A stretch of DNA of 64,000 nt, from positions 1-64,000 of the IMG/VR virus record IMGVR_UViG_3300038441_001119, one strand, 5' to 3'. Position numbers and translations under genes: made by a program. Each line of letters begins with the position of its first letter. Position 1 is the stretch's first letter. A model generated the notes under the pieces. It had not been told where the DNA came from and ran no database searches. It worked only from the letters and a program-made list of their open reading frames with translations. Shown one piece after another: positions 664 to 64,000 of the stretch.

Positions 664-712
664 TAAACAAGAAGCCCCTAGGTGGTTCGCATCGTTGAGA
701 GGCGTCTAGGGG
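664..712 (-). terminator. Putative terminator of the tRNA operon
   Basis: CCCCTAG/CTAGGGG stem (675-681, 706-712) with a long loop, followed by a T-rich tract. Confidence 0.4.
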
Positions 713-875: not shown

Positions 876-1009
876 GAAATTTCGCTTGTCTTTCCAAGCT
901 GTCAAATCTGTTCCAACCTAGGGAACCACTCTCCTCGGCTTACGCCTGTCATGGATTCGAACCATGTCCTTCGCCAGATCTCGATTAGCGAGCGGGAATC
1001 GAACCCGCC
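876..1009 (-). ncRNA. Candidate structured ncRNA inside the tRNA operon, with two T-arm-like hairpins
   Basis: Hairpins GGCGGG-TTCGATT-CCCGCT, CATGG-TTCGAAT-CCATG, GGC-GTAA-GCC and GCTTG-GAAAGA-CAAGC; no ORF; lies between tRNA genes. Confidence 0.55.
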
Positions 1010-1022
1010 TGAATTTATAAAT

Positions 1023-1111
1023 TGGCAGGACGTGCTGGATTTTTACCAACATCCCCCGGCTTTCAACCGGTAGCACTCGCACCCTCATGGGTCTTTTATG
1101 CCTAACGTCCT
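1023..1111 (-). tRNA. Atypical tRNA-Phe(GAA)-like with expanded D-loop and non-canonical T-loop
   Basis: Acceptor AGGACGT/ACGTCCT plus GCCA; anticodon loop TT-GAA-AG; extra hairpin ACCC-ATGA-GGGT in the D-loop; T-loop TAAAAAT. Confidence 0.7.
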
Positions 1112-1201: not shown

Positions 1202-1272
1202 TGGCAAGGGAGGGTGGAGTCGAACCACCAACCGAAAGTTTCCCAACTGCTTTACTGTTAAGCTACTCCCCT
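1202..1272 (-). ncRNA. Anticodon-less tRNA-like RNA
   Basis: Acceptor AGGGGAG/CTCCCTT plus GCCA, D-arm GCTT/AAGC, T-arm GGTGG-TTCGACT-CCACC; anticodon arm is AGTT-GGGA-AACT (GNRA tetraloop). Confidence 0.75.
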
Positions 1273-2370: not shown

Positions 2371-4698
2371 TCAGAGTGTGTTCAGGTAATTGTTGATACG
2401 GTCAATGTGGTCCGTGAGGTCTTCAAGGCTAAGAAGCACAGCGGTCACATCGCCAGACATAGGGTTGAGGAATCCAGCAGTGTGAACATACAAAGCACCA
2501 AGACATCCGAATCCAGTAAAAGCATCGACTGTCATCTCTCCAAGAAGAGTTCCGTTTTGGTAGGCGTTTGTCACACCACCCGACCGAATGATGTAGATGT
2601 TACTGGCAGTACTCCGCGCCACAATTCCAGCATACGCGTCAAAGGCGCCACCAATACCACTCACAATCTCACCATTTCCAGTGTTCCAAATACGTAGAAT
2701 CTGTTCATTGGTGATGGTTGGAATGGAGTAATCACTTGCGATAACGGAATCACCTGATGAAGTAAGCCGCACAACAAGAGTGAAGTCTCCGGTAAGGGGG
2801 ATCCTCGTGCTTGTCAGGGCGTCATCAATACCATCAAACCTGACCACAGGCTTGCCGCTCACAAACTTCAGGGTAGAGCGTTTGGTTTCAGTAGTCTGAC
2901 CAAAGATACGCTCCGAATCAGTAAGTTCATCGCTCCATCCTCCAACAGGTGAACCATCAACTGCGGAAGGCACTGTGCATTCGTCATCTTGATATAGACC
3001 TAATGGAACATTGTCACCATTGTGGGTCTGCAGGCGGAGAGCGAGGGGCAGATCGACAAGAGGATCGATAACCGCAAGGATATTGCTCCGCTTTCCATTG
3101 GAATCCCATACGCGCACTTCGTCATCCTCAGTCACTGACAAAGGAATGGTTGTATTGGTAGTAGTGAATGTCGCACCAACGTTGACACCATTGACAGTGA
3201 GTTGATATGGAGGAATACCACCTTGCACCACCAAATCTCCACCTGCAAAGGCTCCTTCTGGTGCATAGATGTAGACATCGCCCAGATACTTGTTTAGGAC
3301 GTAGTTACGAATATCTTCTACAATGACGGGATCAGCGTCATGCGGAACAAGCCATGCTCCAAAGAATCGAATTGCAGCATGCGCCTGACCATCGCCGCCT
3401 AAGTAACGACCGCCTATAGCATAATGGGTCACATTCAGATTCTGGTCCGCAGCTACAGTTCCAATCTCAGTATTGTCTCTCCACAAAGTTATGTCACCGC
3501 CAGATGGCTCAAAGAGCGCCTCAAAGACATGCTTGCCTTGATAACTCGTCGAATCACTGATCCGGAAGTTCCCTCCTTGGTGTGCTGCAATATTGGTTCC
3601 CCCATTATTGCGAATGAGCATGAAATGTCCACCGCTGTAGTCCTCGTATTCACTGCCGCTACCAAAGACACGTGCGTACTGCTGACCTCCATTACCGAGA
3701 ACCTGATAGGCCACAAAAAGTCTGGCTCCAGTAAAGGACGTGTTGTATGTACCTCTGAGCCAGTCATCGAATCCCTCGAAGATGGAGGAAGGGCGACGGA
3801 TGACAAGGGCTGGATTGTTGCCGCTTTTGTTGGCAGTTACTACCTGACCTGTGGAACAAGCGAATGATGTGGCATTGTCGATAACTGCTGTGTCAGTGAA
3901 ATCAGCATCGAGGCGTTTATCTGTGCCATTGAGGGAAGCGAAGACCTGCACATGTTGAGCTGCATAGCGTATAGGGCTGCCGGTACCGCGATCATACGTT
4001 CCAATCTCGAAGTTTTCATCCGAATCAAACAAATTAACACCCGGTTGAACCGTTGCAGCGGAGCCTACCTGCGTCCATGTCGTCCCGTCGATACTTTCAT
4101 AGAATTTCAATTCACCATCGCTAACCTGTCTGGTAACTCTGACCCATCCCGGAACTCCGTCTACTAGAGTAATGTCCGCGTCTGATGCATTGGCAGTAAT
4201 TCCACCAGAACCATCCGGGGACATGTAGAAAACAAGTTTCCTATTGTTGACTGCAAACACAAAGCAGTAGTTAGCTACATACCATTTCGAGAACAGAGCC
4301 ATATTGGCGGACGAGGTGTGCCAAGATGCAGGACAAAGCTTAACCCTGATGTCGATATCTCCTGTAATGGAGTCTTCTGTAAGATTAGGTATACTGAAAT
4401 AGTTCCCAGCTACGCCGGGAAGGTAGCCATATCCTCTATTCTCTGTCAAAGGCAGATAGATAGGTTGGCTACCGCTTGTAGGCTGCGTTGCATTGGATGC
4501 TGTACCTCTGTTGATCGTAGTGTTAATCAAATCAAAGATACCAGCAGATGTACCGCCTGTCTTCAGTACGCCGTAGTCCATCTCCAGCCTTACAATGGGC
4601 TGTATATGATCCCACACAGGACCATCGGAGTACCATTCGAGATACTGAGTCAGGTCCACACTTACAATCGGACCATGTACGCTTCTAGACAGAGACAT
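2371..4698 (-). CDS. Virion spike/fibre protein with LamG/concanavalin-like domains
   Basis: 775 aa, beta-rich, LamG-like motifs (FDGIDD, GDVTAVLL); shares the LRLQTHNGDNVPLGLYQD module with 48201-51455. Confidence 0.7.
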   Translation of the reverse strand: MSLSRSVHGPIVSVDLTQYLEWYSDGPVWDHIQPIVRLEMDYGVLKTGGTSAGIFDLINTTINRGTASNATQPTSGSQPIYLPLTENRGYGYLPGVAGNYFSIPNLTEDSITGDIDIRVKLCPASWHTSSANMALFSKWYVANYCFVFAVNNRKLVFYMSPDGSGGITANASDADITLVDGVPGWVRVTRQVSDGELKFYESIDGTTWTQVGSAATVQPGVNLFDSDENFEIGTYDRGTGSPIRYAAQHVQVFASLNGTDKRLDADFTDTAVIDNATSFACSTGQVVTANKSGNNPALVIRRPSSIFEGFDDWLRGTYNTSFTGARLFVAYQVLGNGGQQYARVFGSGSEYEDYSGGHFMLIRNNGGTNIAAHQGGNFRISDSTSYQGKHVFEALFEPSGGDITLWRDNTEIGTVAADQNLNVTHYAIGGRYLGGDGQAHAAIRFFGAWLVPHDADPVIVEDIRNYVLNKYLGDVYIYAPEGAFAGGDLVVQGGIPPYQLTVNGVNVGATFTTTNTTIPLSVTEDDEVRVWDSNGKRSNILAVIDPLVDLPLALRLQTHNGDNVPLGLYQDDECTVPSAVDGSPVGGWSDELTDSERIFGQTTETKRSTLKFVSGKPVVRFDGIDDALTSTRIPLTGDFTLVVRLTSSGDSVIASDYSIPTITNEQILRIWNTGNGEIVSGIGGAFDAYAGIVARSTASNIYIIRSGGVTNAYQNGTLLGEMTVDAFTGFGCLGALYVHTAGFLNPMSGDVTAVLLSLEDLTDHIDRINNYLNTL

Positions 4699-40333: not shown

Positions 40334-41015
40334 ACGCTTTGATGATTTGCGAAGACAGTAGTTGTTTGTTGAACTTTTGTTTCGATGTCGGATGGACTGT
40401 CTGTGCCCACGACACCATGTCGTTATTCATCCTGATTACCGTATCCATCGATGCACTGTTGTTACACAGGGCTTCAATGGTTTTCAGTTCATCCAGATCG
40501 AAGAGTACCTCATGGTTGAACTCGACTTTACCTGTTGTCAGCAGGCGCCCCAGCATACGAGTGTACGTATACCTGAACGCAAGTCGCAGTCCGTCGTACT
40601 GTTTGTTGGTACGTCCTTCGCCTACACAAATCTTGAAAGCTTCCGCTAAGTAACGTTCCATGGACAGCTTCAACTTGTCAGCTGCCAGAAACTCACCAGC
40701 GTTTGCTCTAAGGTTCTTGGCGATTTCCGTCATCTTCACAAACGTCCAAGAGGGGGCCAACAGGAAATTAATGGCGTACGGTGTGACGTACGCACAATCC
40801 TTGAACAGAGTAAACAGATCCATTGACTCCAGCACCTCTCCTTCGATCTGTGACTTCACAAGCGTCAGAGGAGTGCCAAGTTCATTACTGGCCTGTAACA
40901 TCTCGAAACCATTGGGCGAGAGATGGAAACCTGAGTACCCTACCGGAACACCGACTGGGAACGAAGATTTCAATCCAAACGAGCTAGGTTCAACTTTGAA
41001 TGCGGCAACGATCAT
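40311..41015 (-). CDS. Hypothetical protein
   Basis: 234-aa ORF in operon. Confidence 0.7.
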   Translation of the reverse strand: MIVAAFKVEPSSFGLKSSFPVGVPVGYSGFHLSPNGFEMLQASNELGTPLTLVKSQIEGEVLESMDLFTLFKDCAYVTPYAINFLLAPSWTFVKMTEIAKNLRANAGEFLAADKLKLSMERYLAEAFKICVGEGRTNKQYDGLRLAFRYTYTRMLGRLLTTGKVEFNHEVLFDLDELKTIEALCNNSASMDTVIRMNNDMVSWAQTVHPTSKQKFNKQLLSSQIIKAYASQSPD

Positions 41016-63209: not shown

Positions 63210-63617
63210 TTAAGCAGCTTTGGTCAAGACCTCCTTTCCAGCTACCAGCCATGCACGGACGTCGTCGCCAGTGTAGGTAGGTTTGCAACCATACGTACGC
63301 ACCATTTGAGCGATGCGTTGGATCTGTTTGGTCTCCAGTGTGGTAGCTTTCTGCTCGACAGTTTCGTAAGTCTTACCGCGAACAATAGCCAGAGCCAGCA
63401 ATGCTTCCCGTGCTGCAGTTCGAACCTCATTGACTCGATGCATACGCAGGTAGTTGTACTGATTCCAGCTGCTTGTTCGTTGTTCTTCCTTGCGGATTAC
63501 CATAGCTTCCAGCGCCAGCGATTTGATCTTGACCCGCAAGGCACACCTCCGATCCAATGGTTGGATAGTTGATGTCTTCTTACGGGCCTTTCTCTTATCG
63601 CGTGTCGCTGCTTTCAT
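63210..63617 (-). CDS. Basic helical hypothetical protein
   Basis: KIKSLA-x-EA-x2-IRKEE...HR-x2-EVR-x2-AR-x2-LLA...RG motif. Confidence 0.75.
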   Translation of the reverse strand: MKAATRDKRKARKKTSTIQPLDRRCALRVKIKSLALEAMVIRKEEQRTSSWNQYNYLRMHRVNEVRTAAREALLALAIVRGKTYETVEQKATTLETKQIQRIAQMVRTYGCKPTYTGDDVRAWLVAGKEVLTKAA

Positions 63618-63678
63618 GTTTTTGTTTTGGTCAATCTACGTTTTCATTGTGCGTAGTTCTCCTTTGTTCGTGGGAGAG

Positions 63679-63758
63679 TGGTGGAGTATTGCGGAGTTTA
63701 ACCGCCCTAGGGGTATTAAGAGGGGCTTCCCTCACCTAGTCGTACGAACTTATACCCC
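63679..63758 (-). ncRNA. 80-nt alanine-acceptor RNA resembling the tmRNA tRNA-like domain, without mRNA-like domain
   Basis: Acceptor GGGGUAU/AUACUCC with G3-U70, discriminator A, CCA; stemless D-loop ending CGAC; CUAGG/CCUAG helix capped by a short hairpin; T-arm GCGG-UUAAACU-CCGC. Confidence 0.75.
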
Positions 63759-63847
63759 AGAAAAAGTAGCCTCGAATTCCCGACATTATTGGGGCATACG
63801 GATAGGTCCCGAAGTCAAGCATCCTCGCATTCGACGACCTTTGGAAA

Positions 63848-64000
63848 TTATTTCTTGATAGTCTTGTTGGAGGTAACGGCCTTGGTGACGAGCTTGGCCA
63901 ACGCAAGAATCGAGGCAGGGGCAAGGGTCTGGCATTCCACCTTGACGGTACCGTCCGAGGCGACGACAGCCACGTAATCGCCAAGCTTCATGGTTGCCGC
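63848..64000 (-). CDS. Hypothetical protein, 3' part only (window edge)
   Basis: Open frame ...MKLGDYVAVVASDGTVKVECQTLAP...IKK-stop. Confidence 0.5.
   Translation of the reverse strand, partial: AATMKLGDYVAVVASDGTVKVECQTLAPASILALAKLVTKAVTSNKTIKK

What the first reader, a model, noticed from the sequence alone, without database searches (positions are those of the whole stretch)
63679..63758. Mini-tmRNA: alanine-chargeable tmRNA-like domain with no tag reading frame
Seen in sequence (minus strand): GGGGUAU-AAGUUCGUACGAC-UAGGUGAGGGAAGCCCCUCUUAAUACCCCUAG-GGCGG-UUAAACU-CCGCA-AUACUCC-A-CCA. It has a G3-U70 wobble and A discriminator (the AlaRS identity elements), a stemless D-loop ending CGAC as in tmRNA, a T-arm and an encoded CCA. 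It has no 7-nt anticodon loop; about 30 nt of hairpin sits where tmRNA has about 270 nt of pseudoknots and tag ORF. Established: domain-only tmRNAs occur in some mitochondria, and the phage tmRNAs I know of are full length. Inference: it could rescue stalled ribosomes without a degradation tag, titrate SmpB to block host trans-translation, or donate Ala outside the ribosome. Caveat: the canonical GAC linker before the T-stem is reduced and the T-loop has A at position 56.
Basis: partly seen in the sequence, partly recalled or inferred. Interest (0 to 1): 0.85.

Follow-up and report, generated by a model that had tools for sequence, protein, structure and literature searches.

The report
Anticodon-less alanine-type tRNA relic
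An 80-base RNA gene in a jumbo phage keeps the amino-acid-accepting half of an alanine tRNA but has no anticodon arm, and because it sits exactly where related phages carry a stop-codon-suppressor tRNA, it is more likely a derelict or repurposed tRNA than a miniature tmRNA.

Summary
The sequence is as described: window 63758..63679 (-) has a perfect 7-bp acceptor stem with G3:U70, A73, an encoded CCA and a T arm, and no 7-nt anticodon loop. It is not chance.

It fails every family model. ARAGORN and Rfam (tRNA, tmRNA, mt-tmRNA, E<=10) find nothing, whereas genuine TLD-only tmRNA-like genes in other phage contigs score 48-73 bits on Rfam tmRNA.

Context decides the reading. The element ends 31 nt before a Shine-Dalgarno-led mini-ORF (ATG AAA ACG TAG) that opens a 135-aa gene. 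In about 60 relatives of that gene, a suppressor tRNA (CUA or UCA type) occupies this slot, and the mini-ORF's stop codon matches the tRNA's anticodon (Fisher P 2e-5).

From residue 37 to the CCA the element is colinear with a class I tRNA. Its loop reads CUCUUAA, one base from the cassette's CUCUAAA. Four extra bases (GCCC) displace the 5' strand of the anticodon stem.

My best reading is a decayed or repurposed cassette tRNA. The CUA-type tRNA 2 kb upstream probably does the suppressing now.

An active, alanine-charged, non-decoding RNA is not excluded, and the window holds a second anticodon-less tRNA-like gene. Only one identical second assembly exists, so no covariation test was possible.

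The parts
63679..63758 (-). tRNA-like element, 80 nt. Layout: acceptor 5' strand 63758-63752; mini D arm 63749-63739; hairpin GAGGG-AAGC-CCCUC 63733-63720; relic anticodon loop CUCUUAA 63722-63716; T arm 63706-63690; acceptor 3' strand 63689-63683; A73 63682; CCA 63681-63679.
   Evidence: Sequence. Fold and pair probabilities. R2 model 17.7 bits, E 0.014. No ARAGORN or Rfam call.
63710..63716 (-). Internal AUACCCC, a perfect second complement of the 5' acceptor strand. In the tRNA-colinear reading it overlaps the 3' strand of the former anticodon stem (UACCC).
   Evidence: Sequence. The alternative pairing 1-7:43-49 has probability 0.39, with an energy of -22.8 against -25.2 kcal/mol for the MFE.
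63811..63818 (-). TTGACTTC, a possible promoter element 52 nt upstream of the element.
   Evidence: On the coding strand of 68 kb this 8-mer occurs only here and 34 nt upstream of the tRNA at L001:2070. The sigma-70 consensus scan found no promoter here. This is weak evidence.
63659..63665 (-). Shine-Dalgarno AAAGGAG of the mini-ORF. Its GGAG core (63662-63659) starts 16 nt after the element's CCA.
   Evidence: Sequence. The same AAAGGAGA motif precedes the mini-ORF in L080, L048 and L040.
63636..63647 (-). Leader mini-ORF ATG AAA ACG TAG, in frame with and open to the 135-aa gene.
   Evidence: SD-led mini-ORFs of 1-2 codons (the window's has 2 after the ATG) are 29-fold enriched in the 200 nt before genes of this family, and their stop codon matches the neighbouring tRNA's anticodon.
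63210..63617 (-). 135-aa gene of an uncharacterised phage family (motif LKVKIKSLAAEARIIRKEE...HR..VR.EAR..LAYGFLRG) that travels with suppressor tRNAs. Its true start may be the ATG at 63647, reached by amber read-through.
   Evidence: No Pfam, PHROG or PDB match. AF2 model pLDDT 88.7, helical hairpin, with no Foldseek match at E<1.

Best explanation
The element is the tRNA member of a mobile phage cassette. The cassette order is: suppressor tRNA, then 15-39 nt, then an SD-led mini-ORF that ends in the stop codon this tRNA reads, then a roughly 100-150-aa helical protein.

In this phage the slot tRNA has an alanine-type acceptor end. It has lost its decoding half in three ways:
- The D arm is reduced to 3 bp.
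- Four extra bases (GCCC) separate the old 5' anticodon-stem strand (GGGAA) from the loop.
- The loop reads CUCUUAA (CUU) instead of the cassette's CUCUAAA (CUA).
The region now folds into a GAGGG/CCCUC tetraloop hairpin.

Shown: the anatomy, the position and the cassette rule.

Inferred:
- The element no longer decodes.
- Amber suppression of the retained ATG AAA ACG TAG leader is now supplied by the 8-nt-loop CUA-type tRNA 2 kb upstream (L001:2070-2148).
- The intact acceptor/T minihelix with CCA would still be cut out by RNase P. That would define the 5' end of the mini-ORF mRNA, and the released RNA could be charged with alanine.

The element is therefore a relic whose remaining role, if any, is transcript processing, not ribosome rescue.
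For: Position:
- The CCA-to-ATG gap is 31 nt here and 15-39 nt in 9 relatives that carry a tRNA upstream.
- ARAGORN calls a suppressor-type tRNA within 620 nt of the gene in about 30 of the roughly 65 relatives. At least 16 more have uncalled 66-69-nt tRNA-like genes with a GGG-CUUUCAAU-CCC arm about 100-150 nt upstream.
- The stop codon matches the anticodon: amber tRNA with TAG 11, opal tRNA with TGA 12, opal tRNA with TAG 0, amber tRNA with TGA 2; Fisher P 2e-5. Mini-ORF density is 2.2 per kb upstream of the gene against 0.075 per kb elsewhere in the loci.
- The window's AAAGGAG-ATG-(AAA)-ACG-TAG is shared almost base for base with L080, L048 and L040, which carry tRNA(CUA).

Colinearity (from the sequence):
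- The segments add up as 7+2+18+5+[4]+7+5+4+5+7+5+7+1+3 = 80, which is a 76-nt class I tRNA plus 4 nt.
- CUCUUAAUAC matches the L049 tRNA(CUA) CUCUAAAUAC at 9 of 10 positions, with the same spacing to the T stem.
- Reduced D arms are normal among the cassette tRNAs.

Other support:
- R2 aligns only the acceptor, T arm and CCA (17.7 bits); the D and anticodon arms are skipped.
- All seven tRNAs of this phage seen here have an encoded CCA.
- The same genome holds other tRNA debris: two orphan T arms and an 89-nt odd tRNA-like.
- A CUA-type tRNA lies 2 kb upstream on the same strand.
Against: - There are no homologues of the element itself, so neither decay nor selection can be measured. The second assembly is 100% identical.
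- Neutral decay should not spare a 7-of-7 acceptor stem, A73, CCA and most of the T arm while remodelling the rest.
- None of the cassette tRNAs examined has G3:U70, so the alanine-type acceptor is unusual for the slot.
- The 13-nt CGAC segment and the UUAAACU T loop resemble tmRNA.
- A second anticodon-less tRNA-like gene (1272..1205), with a neat GGGA tetraloop replacing the anticodon arm, suggests that such RNAs may be used by this phage.
- The anticodon loop of the upstream CUA-type tRNA is itself non-canonical (8 nt).
Confidence: 0.5

Rival explanations
1. An active, non-decoding alanine acceptor. The RNA is processed like a tRNA and charged by host AlaRS. It then acts off-template, as a decoy or sponge for tRNA-directed host factors (anticodon nucleases, modification or charging enzymes, EF-Tu), as an alanine donor, or as a partner of the adjacent 135-aa protein.
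For: - The alanine identity set, CCA and a 7-of-7 acceptor stem are all present. No Ala-type hit appeared in 100 shuffled windows.
- A second anticodon-less tRNA-like gene at 1272..1205 has a canonical acceptor, D arm and T arm (Rfam tRNA 42 bits), with its anticodon arm replaced by a 4-bp GGGA tetraloop hairpin.
- The 135-aa protein family is always next to tRNA or tmRNA genes.
- The loop sequence CUCUUAA is that of a Lys(CUU) anticodon loop, displayed in a non-decoding context.
Against: - There is no conservation data.
- The T stem has a G.A mismatch, and the T loop lacks C56.
- The fold is no better than shuffles, and a competing conformer has probability 0.39.
- No homologue was found in 690 kb of related loci.
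Confidence: 0.22
2. A true reduced tmRNA. The tRNA-like domain descends from ssrA. It binds SmpB and enters stalled ribosomes without adding a tag, or it titrates SmpB.
For: - R1 (the element's model) aligns end to end with the TLD-only RNA of L099/L100: acceptor, 13 nt ending CGAC, a helix, an insert of about 20 nt, the T arm and CUCCACCA (22.5 bits, E 0.005).
- GGTTAAACTCC-N6-CTCCACCA gave 10 matches in bacterial genomes. ARAGORN places 3 at tmRNA 3' ends, and none lies in a called tRNA-Ala.
- TLD-only tmRNA-like genes do exist in phage contigs.
- Permuted tmRNA genes lie next to the same protein family in L071, L072, L077 and L078.
Against: - Rfam tmRNA, mt-tmRNA and the permuted tmRNA families give no hit at E<=10, against 72.6 and 47.9 bits for the controls.
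- There is no GG..UUCGAC motif and no GGAC linker, and the T stem follows the helix directly.
- A tRNA(CUA) scores the same as the TLD under R1.
- In the cassettes the tmRNAs lie downstream of the gene, whereas the upstream slot holds tRNAs.
- The length arithmetic fits a 76-nt tRNA plus 4 nt.
- The TLD-only genes of L100 and L101 are not next to this protein family.
Confidence: 0.1
3. Still a working suppressor. The RNA decodes UAG (or UAA) with an expanded, 11-15-nt anticodon loop.
For: The downstream mini-ORF keeps its TAG. The cassette tRNAs tolerate odd loops, such as the 8-nt CUUUCAAU.
Against: - No CUA or UUA triplet sits in a 7- or 8-nt loop closed by a stem.
- The loop triplet in register is CUU.
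- The GAGGG/CCCUC hairpin (probability 0.95) sequesters the first 3 nt (CUC) of the CUCUUAA loop.
- ARAGORN makes a call here only at 60% of its threshold, as Ser(GGA), along with two spurious calls in the same 261 nt.
Confidence: 0.04
4. A chance resemblance in an intergenic spacer.
For: One probable chance hit of the generic pattern exists elsewhere in the window (40393-40495 on the plus strand).
Against: The alanine-type ends, the coding-strand orientation, the intergenic position and the exact cassette slot all argue against chance. The E-value is 0.014 without using any of that context.
Confidence: 0.02

Closest known systems
Phage suppressor tRNAs, e.g. tRNA-Sup-CTA of Stenotrophomonas phage DLP5 (8 nt after DLP05_071), and the CUA/UCA tRNAs of L034-L095
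   Same: Same cassette and strand. The distance to the SD-led mini-ORF is the same (31 nt against 15-39 nt). The CCA is encoded. The relic loop CUCUUAA differs from CUCUAAA at one position.
   Different: No closed 7-nt anticodon loop, a degenerate D arm, 4 extra bases, and an alanine-type acceptor that none of the cassette tRNAs examined has.
tmRNA tRNA-like domain, including TLD-only forms: jakobid mitochondrial mt-tmRNA (Rfam RF02544) and the 72-82-nt phage genes found here (L100:7283-7202, L101:978-907)
   Same: G3.U70, A73, CCA. A D region of about 13 nt ending CGAC. A helix where the anticodon stem would be. No tag reading frame. The T loop UUAAACU is seen in real tmRNAs.
   Different: It fails the Rfam models. 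It lacks the GG..UUCGAC and GGAC signatures. Its genomic slot is that of a tRNA.
tRNA-Ala and alanine minihelices (AlaRS charges acceptor-T minihelices carrying G3:U70; established knowledge, Francklyn and Schimmel 1989, from memory)
   Same: The full acceptor identity set and a coaxial acceptor/T helix with CCA.
   Different: The D and anticodon domains are not those of tRNA-Ala. Charging has not been tested.
Anticodon-less tRNA-like small RNAs (mascRNA type, Rfam RF01684) and tRNA gene fragments or pseudogenes in prokaryotic genomes (PMC9897764)
   Same: A tRNA top half with a shortened or altered anticodon arm. The cassette's short tRNA-like L035 even hits RF01684 at 29.4 bits.
   Different: The element itself hits none of these models.

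Membership tests
tmRNA (Rfam RF00023 and the permuted, alpha, beta and cyano variants) | Covariance-model score at or near the gathering threshold | tested here: not met
   No hit at E<=10 in window 63560-63880 and none at the gathering threshold. Positive controls with the mRNA domain deleted: L100 72.6 bits and L101 47.9 bits against a gathering score of 47.
tmRNA | Acceptor stem with G3.U70, A73, and a CCA end | tested here: met
   Read from the sequence.
tmRNA | Stemless D loop with the GG..UUCGAC signature, and a GGAC junction before the T stem | tested here: not met
   The D region is AAGUUCGUACGAC (no GG, and UUCG separated from CGAC), and no linker lies between the helix and the T stem. 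The phage and bacterial tmRNAs fetched here all carry the motifs.
tmRNA | T arm of 5 bp with a 7-nt loop | tested here: inconclusive
   The stem is 4 bp plus G.A. The loop UUAAACU occurs at the 3' end of ARAGORN-called tmRNAs L110, L111 and L112, but A56 also occurs in phage tRNAs (L071, L081).
tmRNA | mRNA-like domain with a resume codon, a tag ORF and pseudoknots | tested here: not met
   Only 23 nt (25-47) lie inside the central helix. ARAGORN finds no tag peptide.
tmRNA | SmpB partner and alanylation | not testable with these tools
   Only 68 kb of the 212-kb genome was in hand, and biochemistry is needed.
mt-tmRNA (RF02544) | Covariance-model score | tested here: not met
   No hit at E<=10.
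Canonical tRNA (RF00005 / ARAGORN) | Cloverleaf with a D arm and a 5-bp anticodon stem closing a 7-nt loop | tested here: not met
   No ARAGORN call down to 80% of its threshold. No Rfam tRNA hit at E<=10. R2 skips 32 model positions covering the D and anticodon arms.
Canonical tRNA | 7-bp acceptor stem, T arm adjacent to it, discriminator and CCA | tested here: met
   (17.7 bits, E 0.014).
Cassette tRNA (slot upstream of the mini-ORF of the 135-aa gene family) | Same strand, with the 3' end 15-39 nt before the ATG of an SD-led mini-ORF | tested here: met
   31 nt.
Cassette tRNA | Anticodon complementary to the mini-ORF's stop codon | tested here: not met
   The mini-ORF ends in TAG. The element has no closed anticodon loop, and the relic loop reads CUU.
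AlaRS substrate (minihelix-Ala type) | G3.U70 with G2-C71, G4-C69 and A73 on a stacked acceptor/T helix with CCA | tested here: met
   Met on sequence only. Charging itself cannot be tested here.

The most novel reading that the evidence does not exclude
This phage deliberately makes anticodon-less, chargeable tRNA-like RNAs: this alanine-type one and the tetraloop one at 1272..1205. They act at the ribosomal A site or on tRNA-directed host factors. Together with the tRNA-linked 135-aa protein they would form a minimal tag-less rescue or decoy system, tied to a stop-codon-suppression sensor.
Probability: 0.12. Interest if true: 0.85.

Novelty: new member of a known kind. Interest (0 to 1): 0.5.

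Why it matters
Taken alone, the element is probably one more degenerate tRNA gene. Chasing it did three useful things.

1. It showed that the mini-tmRNA label fails a test that real TLD-only phage tmRNA-like genes pass. Such genes do exist (L100, L101).

2. It uncovered a widespread, unannotated phage cassette. In it a suppressor tRNA is followed by a start-X-stop mini-ORF whose stop codon matches the tRNA's anticodon, and then by a protein of unknown fold. This looks like a built-in sensor of suppression and bears on how phages time or control stop-codon read-through. The cassette occurs in cultured phages (Stenotrophomonas DLP5 and Summit, Agrobacterium OLIVR1-3), so it can be tested.

3. 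It showed that annotation pipelines miss whole families of short non-canonical phage tRNAs.

If the element is in fact active, it would be a natural alanine minihelix with a function outside decoding.

Tried and rejected
Searches for homologues of the element:
- GenBank phages with 4 kb of DNA, near and distant modes: no match.
- Flanking proteins in IMG/VR: only the source contig.
- JGI metagenomes with the 135-aa protein: one 100% identical second assembly and one distant relative.
- The 23 related jumbo phages found through the RNAP subunit: no cassette and no tRNAs near that gene.
- A model of the element run over 690 kb of loci: no homologue.
- DNA pattern GGGG..CTCCACCA in the loci: only chance or coding matches.
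- Mini-ORF pattern scan of IMG/VR: 14 unrelated hits.

Other ideas tested and dropped:
- Genome-wide TAG recoding: simple ORF statistics give no sign of it in the window.
- A specific parent tRNA: local alignment of the 3' part against 126 tRNAs in the loci shows only generic similarity.
- Function of the 135-aa protein: Pfam, PHROGs, PDB sequences and Foldseek against the PDB gave nothing.
- A sigma-70 promoter upstream of the element: none found by the consensus scan.
- A third covariance model built from TLD-only genes: dropped because the two usable sequences align out of register in the acceptor strand.
- The L043 and L072 80-nt elements looked similar in size, but they have their own CUGAUAM 7-nt loop hairpin and are a different kind of odd tRNA.

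Full report
WHAT IS THERE. The window is part of a 212-kb jumbo-phage contig, IMGVR_UViG_3300038441_001119. It encodes split multisubunit RNA polymerase subunits, NAMPT and several tRNAs. The quoted 80 nt lie at 63758..63679 on the minus strand, which is the coding strand. They sit in a 200-nt gap between a 163-aa gene and a 135-aa gene.

The acceptor stem is perfect (7 of 7 pairs, with G3.U70). The discriminator is A and the CCA is encoded, as it is in all seven tRNAs of this phage that I could see. The T stem has 4 pairs plus a G.A mismatch, and the T loop is UUAAACU. Between the two acceptor strands lie a 13-nt segment ending in CGAC, a CUAGG/CCUAG helix and a GAGGG-AAGC-CCCUC hairpin. There is no 7-nt loop closed by a 5-bp stem.

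The whole-molecule fold is no more stable than shuffled sequence (z -1.08). A rival conformer, in which the 5' strand pairs with an internal AUACCCC, holds 39% of the ensemble.

IS IT MORE THAN CHANCE? A generic pattern of acceptor stem, T arm and NCCA turns up 0.14 times per shuffled window. With alanine-type ends it turned up 0 times in 100 shuffles. A tRNA-plus-CCA covariance model built from 20 related phage tRNAs and run without filters gives the element 17.7 bits (E 0.014). That places it directly below the phage's tRNA-like genes and above the best unrelated hit of 11 bits. Only the acceptor stem, T arm and CCA align; 32 model positions covering the D and anticodon arms are skipped.

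FAMILY TESTS. ARAGORN finds nothing at the default or at 80% of its threshold. At 60% it calls the exact interval as 'Ser(GGA)', along with two spurious calls in the same 261 nt. Rfam finds nothing at the gathering threshold and nothing at E<=10 in a 321-nt slice. That covers tRNA, tmRNA, the permuted, alpha, beta and cyano tmRNAs, and mt-tmRNA.

This negative result is meaningful because a pattern scan of IMG/VR turned up real TLD-only tmRNA-like genes. L100:7283-7202 (identical to L099) is 82 nt and scores 72.6 bits on Rfam tmRNA, with 304 model positions replaced by 12 nt. It has no coding piece within 1.4 kb. L101:978-907 scores 47.9 bits. So miniature tmRNAs do exist in phages and the model sees them. 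The window's element lacks their GG..UUCGAC and GGAC signatures.

- The element's own model aligns colinearly with the L099/L100 RNA (22.5 bits, E 0.005). A tRNA(CUA) from L049 ties with it at 22.4 bits.
- The motif GGTTAAACTCC-N6-CTCCACCA gave 10 matches across 185,579 bacterial and archaeal genomes. ARAGORN places 3 of them at tmRNA 3' ends, and none lies in a called tRNA-Ala.
- A at T-loop position 56 therefore does not disqualify a tmRNA, although it also occurs in phage tRNAs (L071 and L081).

CONTEXT. The 135-aa protein has no Pfam, PHROG or PDB relative. Its confident AF2 model (pLDDT 88.7) is a long helical hairpin with no Foldseek match at E<1. It does have about 65 relatives in viral and metagenomic contigs.

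In roughly 30 of these, ARAGORN calls a tRNA with a CUA, UCA or odd 6- or 8-nt-loop anticodon within 620 nt on the same strand. My own scanner found at least 16 more uncalled tRNA-like genes of 66-69 nt. These have a mini D arm and a GGG-CUUUCAAU-CCC arm, and lie about 100-150 nt upstream of the gene. One of them hits only the mascRNA model. Permuted tmRNA genes lie just downstream of the gene in L071 and L077, and further away in L072 and L078.

Between the tRNA and the gene sits a Shine-Dalgarno-led mini-ORF of one or two codons. Its density is 2.2 per kb there, against 0.075 per kb elsewhere in the loci. Its stop codon matches the neighbouring tRNA's anticodon:
- amber tRNA with TAG: 11
- opal-type tRNA with TGA: 12
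- opal-type tRNA with TAG: 0
- amber tRNA with TGA: 2 (both are overlapping secondary calls in L083)
The Fisher test gives P 2e-5.

In L080, L048, L040 and the window, the mini-ORF is almost the same DNA (AAAGGAGA ... ATG (AAA) ACG TAG). It is in frame with the gene and open to it. L080 and L048 have no other ATG before the conserved domain. Expression of the protein therefore appears to report on suppression.

The tRNA's 3' end lies 15-39 nt before the mini-ORF's ATG in nine relatives. The element's CCA lies 31 nt before it. The element occupies the tRNA slot of this cassette.

ANATOMY RE-READ AS A tRNA. Counting from the 5' end, the segments are:
- acceptor strand, 7 nt
- 2 nt
- D region, 18 nt
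- GGGAA, 5 nt
- GCCC, 4 nt
- CUCUUAA, 7 nt
- UACCC, 5 nt
- CUAG, 4 nt
- T arm, 5+7+5 nt
- acceptor strand, 7 nt
- A, then CCA
The total is 80, which is a 76-nt class I tRNA plus four bases. GGGAA can pair with UACCC (4 of 5 pairs).

The decamer CUCUUAAUAC matches CUCUAAAUAC of the L049 amber tRNA at 9 of 10 positions, with the same spacing to the T stem. The loop as it stands is a Lys(CUU)-type loop, one base away from the cassette's amber loop. With the four extra bases present, the region prefers the GAGGG/CCCUC hairpin (probability 0.95).

Reduced D arms are common in the conserved short cassette tRNAs, so that feature alone is not evidence of decay. No particular parent tRNA could be identified.

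MOST LIKELY MECHANISM. The element descends from the cassette's tRNA and can no longer decode. The phage keeps the TAG leader, and 2 kb upstream on the same strand it has a tRNA with the 8-nt loop UUCCUAGG (CUA or CCUA; Rfam tRNA 44.6 bits). That tRNA is the likely current suppressor.

The intact minihelix with CCA is a standard RNase P substrate shape. It also carries the full alanine identity set (established knowledge on minihelix-Ala). I therefore expect the element to be excised, which would set the 5' end of the mini-ORF mRNA, and possibly to be charged. These two steps are inference.

The same genome holds other tRNA debris in its tRNA cluster: two orphan perfect T arms and an 89-nt odd tRNA-like gene. 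That fits ongoing turnover of tRNA genes.

WHAT KEEPS THE ALTERNATIVE ALIVE. The acceptor half is too clean for a long-dead pseudogene. None of the cassette tRNAs examined has G3.U70. The window also contains a second RNA that is a canonical tRNA in every respect except that its anticodon arm is replaced by a 4-bp GGGA tetraloop hairpin (1272..1205; Rfam tRNA 42 bits with a local deletion; no ARAGORN call). Two anticodon-less tRNA-like genes in one phage may mean that such RNAs are in use.

LIMITS. No covariation test was possible. The only other copy is 100% identical over 6.4 kb. The related jumbo phages lack the cassette. I saw only 68 kb of the genome, so the presence of SmpB or AlaRS genes is unknown.

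Noticed in passing
window 63636-63665 (-); L034-L095, e.g. L080:2472-2491, L037:2401-2420, L050:2407-2428: A conserved cassette: a suppressor tRNA, then an SD-led 'ATG-X-stop' mini-ORF whose stop codon matches the tRNA's anticodon (TAG with CUA, TGA with UCA type; Fisher P 2e-5), then an uncharacterised helical protein of about 100-150 aa. It looks like a sensor of stop-codon suppression. I found no description of it in four literature searches.
   Followed up: partly
window 1205-1272 (-): A second anticodon-less tRNA-like gene. Its acceptor stem, D arm, T arm and GCCA end are canonical, but the anticodon arm is replaced by a 4-bp stem with a GGGA tetraloop. Rfam tRNA gives 42 bits with 15 model positions replaced by 11 nt. 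ARAGORN does not call it.
   Followed up: partly
window 1023-1111 (-), 992-1008 (-), 950-966 (-): An 89-nt odd tRNA-like gene (7-bp acceptor stem, T loop UAAAAAU, GCCA end; 23.7 bits on my tRNA model), and two orphan perfect T arms (GCGGG.UUCGAUU.CCCGC and CAUGG.UUCGAAU.CCAUG) that have no 5' halves. All lie inside the tRNA cluster.
   Followed up: partly
L001:2070-2148 (+), about 1.9 kb beyond the window's high end, on the same strand as the element: A tRNA with an 8-nt anticodon loop, UUCCUAGG (ARAGORN anticodon 'ccta'; Rfam tRNA 44.6 bits), directly followed by tRNA-Gln(UUG). It is a likely amber or quadruplet suppressor for the TAG leader.
   Followed up: partly
L035:817-888, L045:2328-2397, L050:2325-2395, L052:2319-2390, L057:2337-2405, L061:2275-2344, L068:2352-2421, L076:1513-1582 and others: A family of 66-69-nt tRNA-like genes missed by ARAGORN. 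They have a mini D arm (3-4 bp), a GGG-CUUUCAAU-CCC arm with an 8-nt loop, a canonical T arm, and mostly an encoded NCCA. Full-size tRNAs with the same 8-nt loop also exist (L058, L056). Their pairing with TGA mini-ORFs argues that they read UGA.
   Followed up: partly
L100:7202-7283 (-) = L099:10-91 (-); L101:907-978 (-): Genuine TLD-only tmRNA-like genes of 72-82 nt in other phage contigs. They score 72.6 and 47.9 bits on Rfam tmRNA with the whole mRNA domain absent, and L100 has no coding piece within 1.4 kb. They are not next to the 135-aa protein family.
   Followed up: partly
L102:8674-9235 (+): A permuted (two-piece) tmRNA gene (90 bits) has an extra GGGG... 5' strand just upstream of its acceptor piece, which can pair with that piece. 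It may be a remnant of the tandem duplication that produced the permutation.
   Followed up: no
window 674-712 (-): A sub-threshold match to the abiF RNA motif (27.3 bits, gathering score 37, E 0.015), immediately downstream of tRNA-Gly.
   Followed up: no
window 63811-63818 (-) and L001:2028-2035 (+); window 63836-63846 (-) and L001:2226-2236 (+): TTGACTTC precedes both RNA loci, and TTCCAAAGGTC occurs once near each (after tRNA-Gln, and after the stop of the 163-aa gene). These are possible phage promoter or processing motifs. The counts are too small to judge.
   Followed up: partly
L043:2877-2956 (+), L072:2897-2976 (+): 80-nt tRNA-like genes with no D arm. They have a covarying hairpin (CCGC/GCGG against CGCC/GGCG) closing the loop CUGAUAM (a GAU anticodon?), followed by 22 nt before the T arm. 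L043 scores 27.2 bits on Rfam tRNA, just under the threshold.
   Followed up: no
L001:162-1049 and 1039-2031; L001:3009-3485 and 3506-3997: Two pairs of adjacent paralogous genes lie upstream of the element: 295 and 330 aa, sharing a ...ASWGDEA... C-terminus, and 158 and 163 aa, with similar basic N-termini.
   Followed up: no
L127 (Stenotrophomonas phage DLP5, 49873-50342), L128 (Agrobacterium phage OLIVR1, 40274-40918): Cultured phages carry the cassette. In DLP5 the hypothetical protein DLP05_071 is followed 8 nt later by the annotated tRNA-Sup-CTA. In OLIVR1 the gene gp84, annotated 'putative structural protein', lies 104 nt after a tRNA annotated as Val, which ARAGORN reads as an odd 'ccta' loop (L090).
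   Followed up: partly
L103:3722-3746 (-) against the tmRNA at L103:5705-6080 (-): A second copy of a tmRNA-type 3' end lies 2 kb from the intact tmRNA gene in a gammaproteobacterial MAG. This is the usual footprint of an element integrated into ssrA.
   Followed up: no
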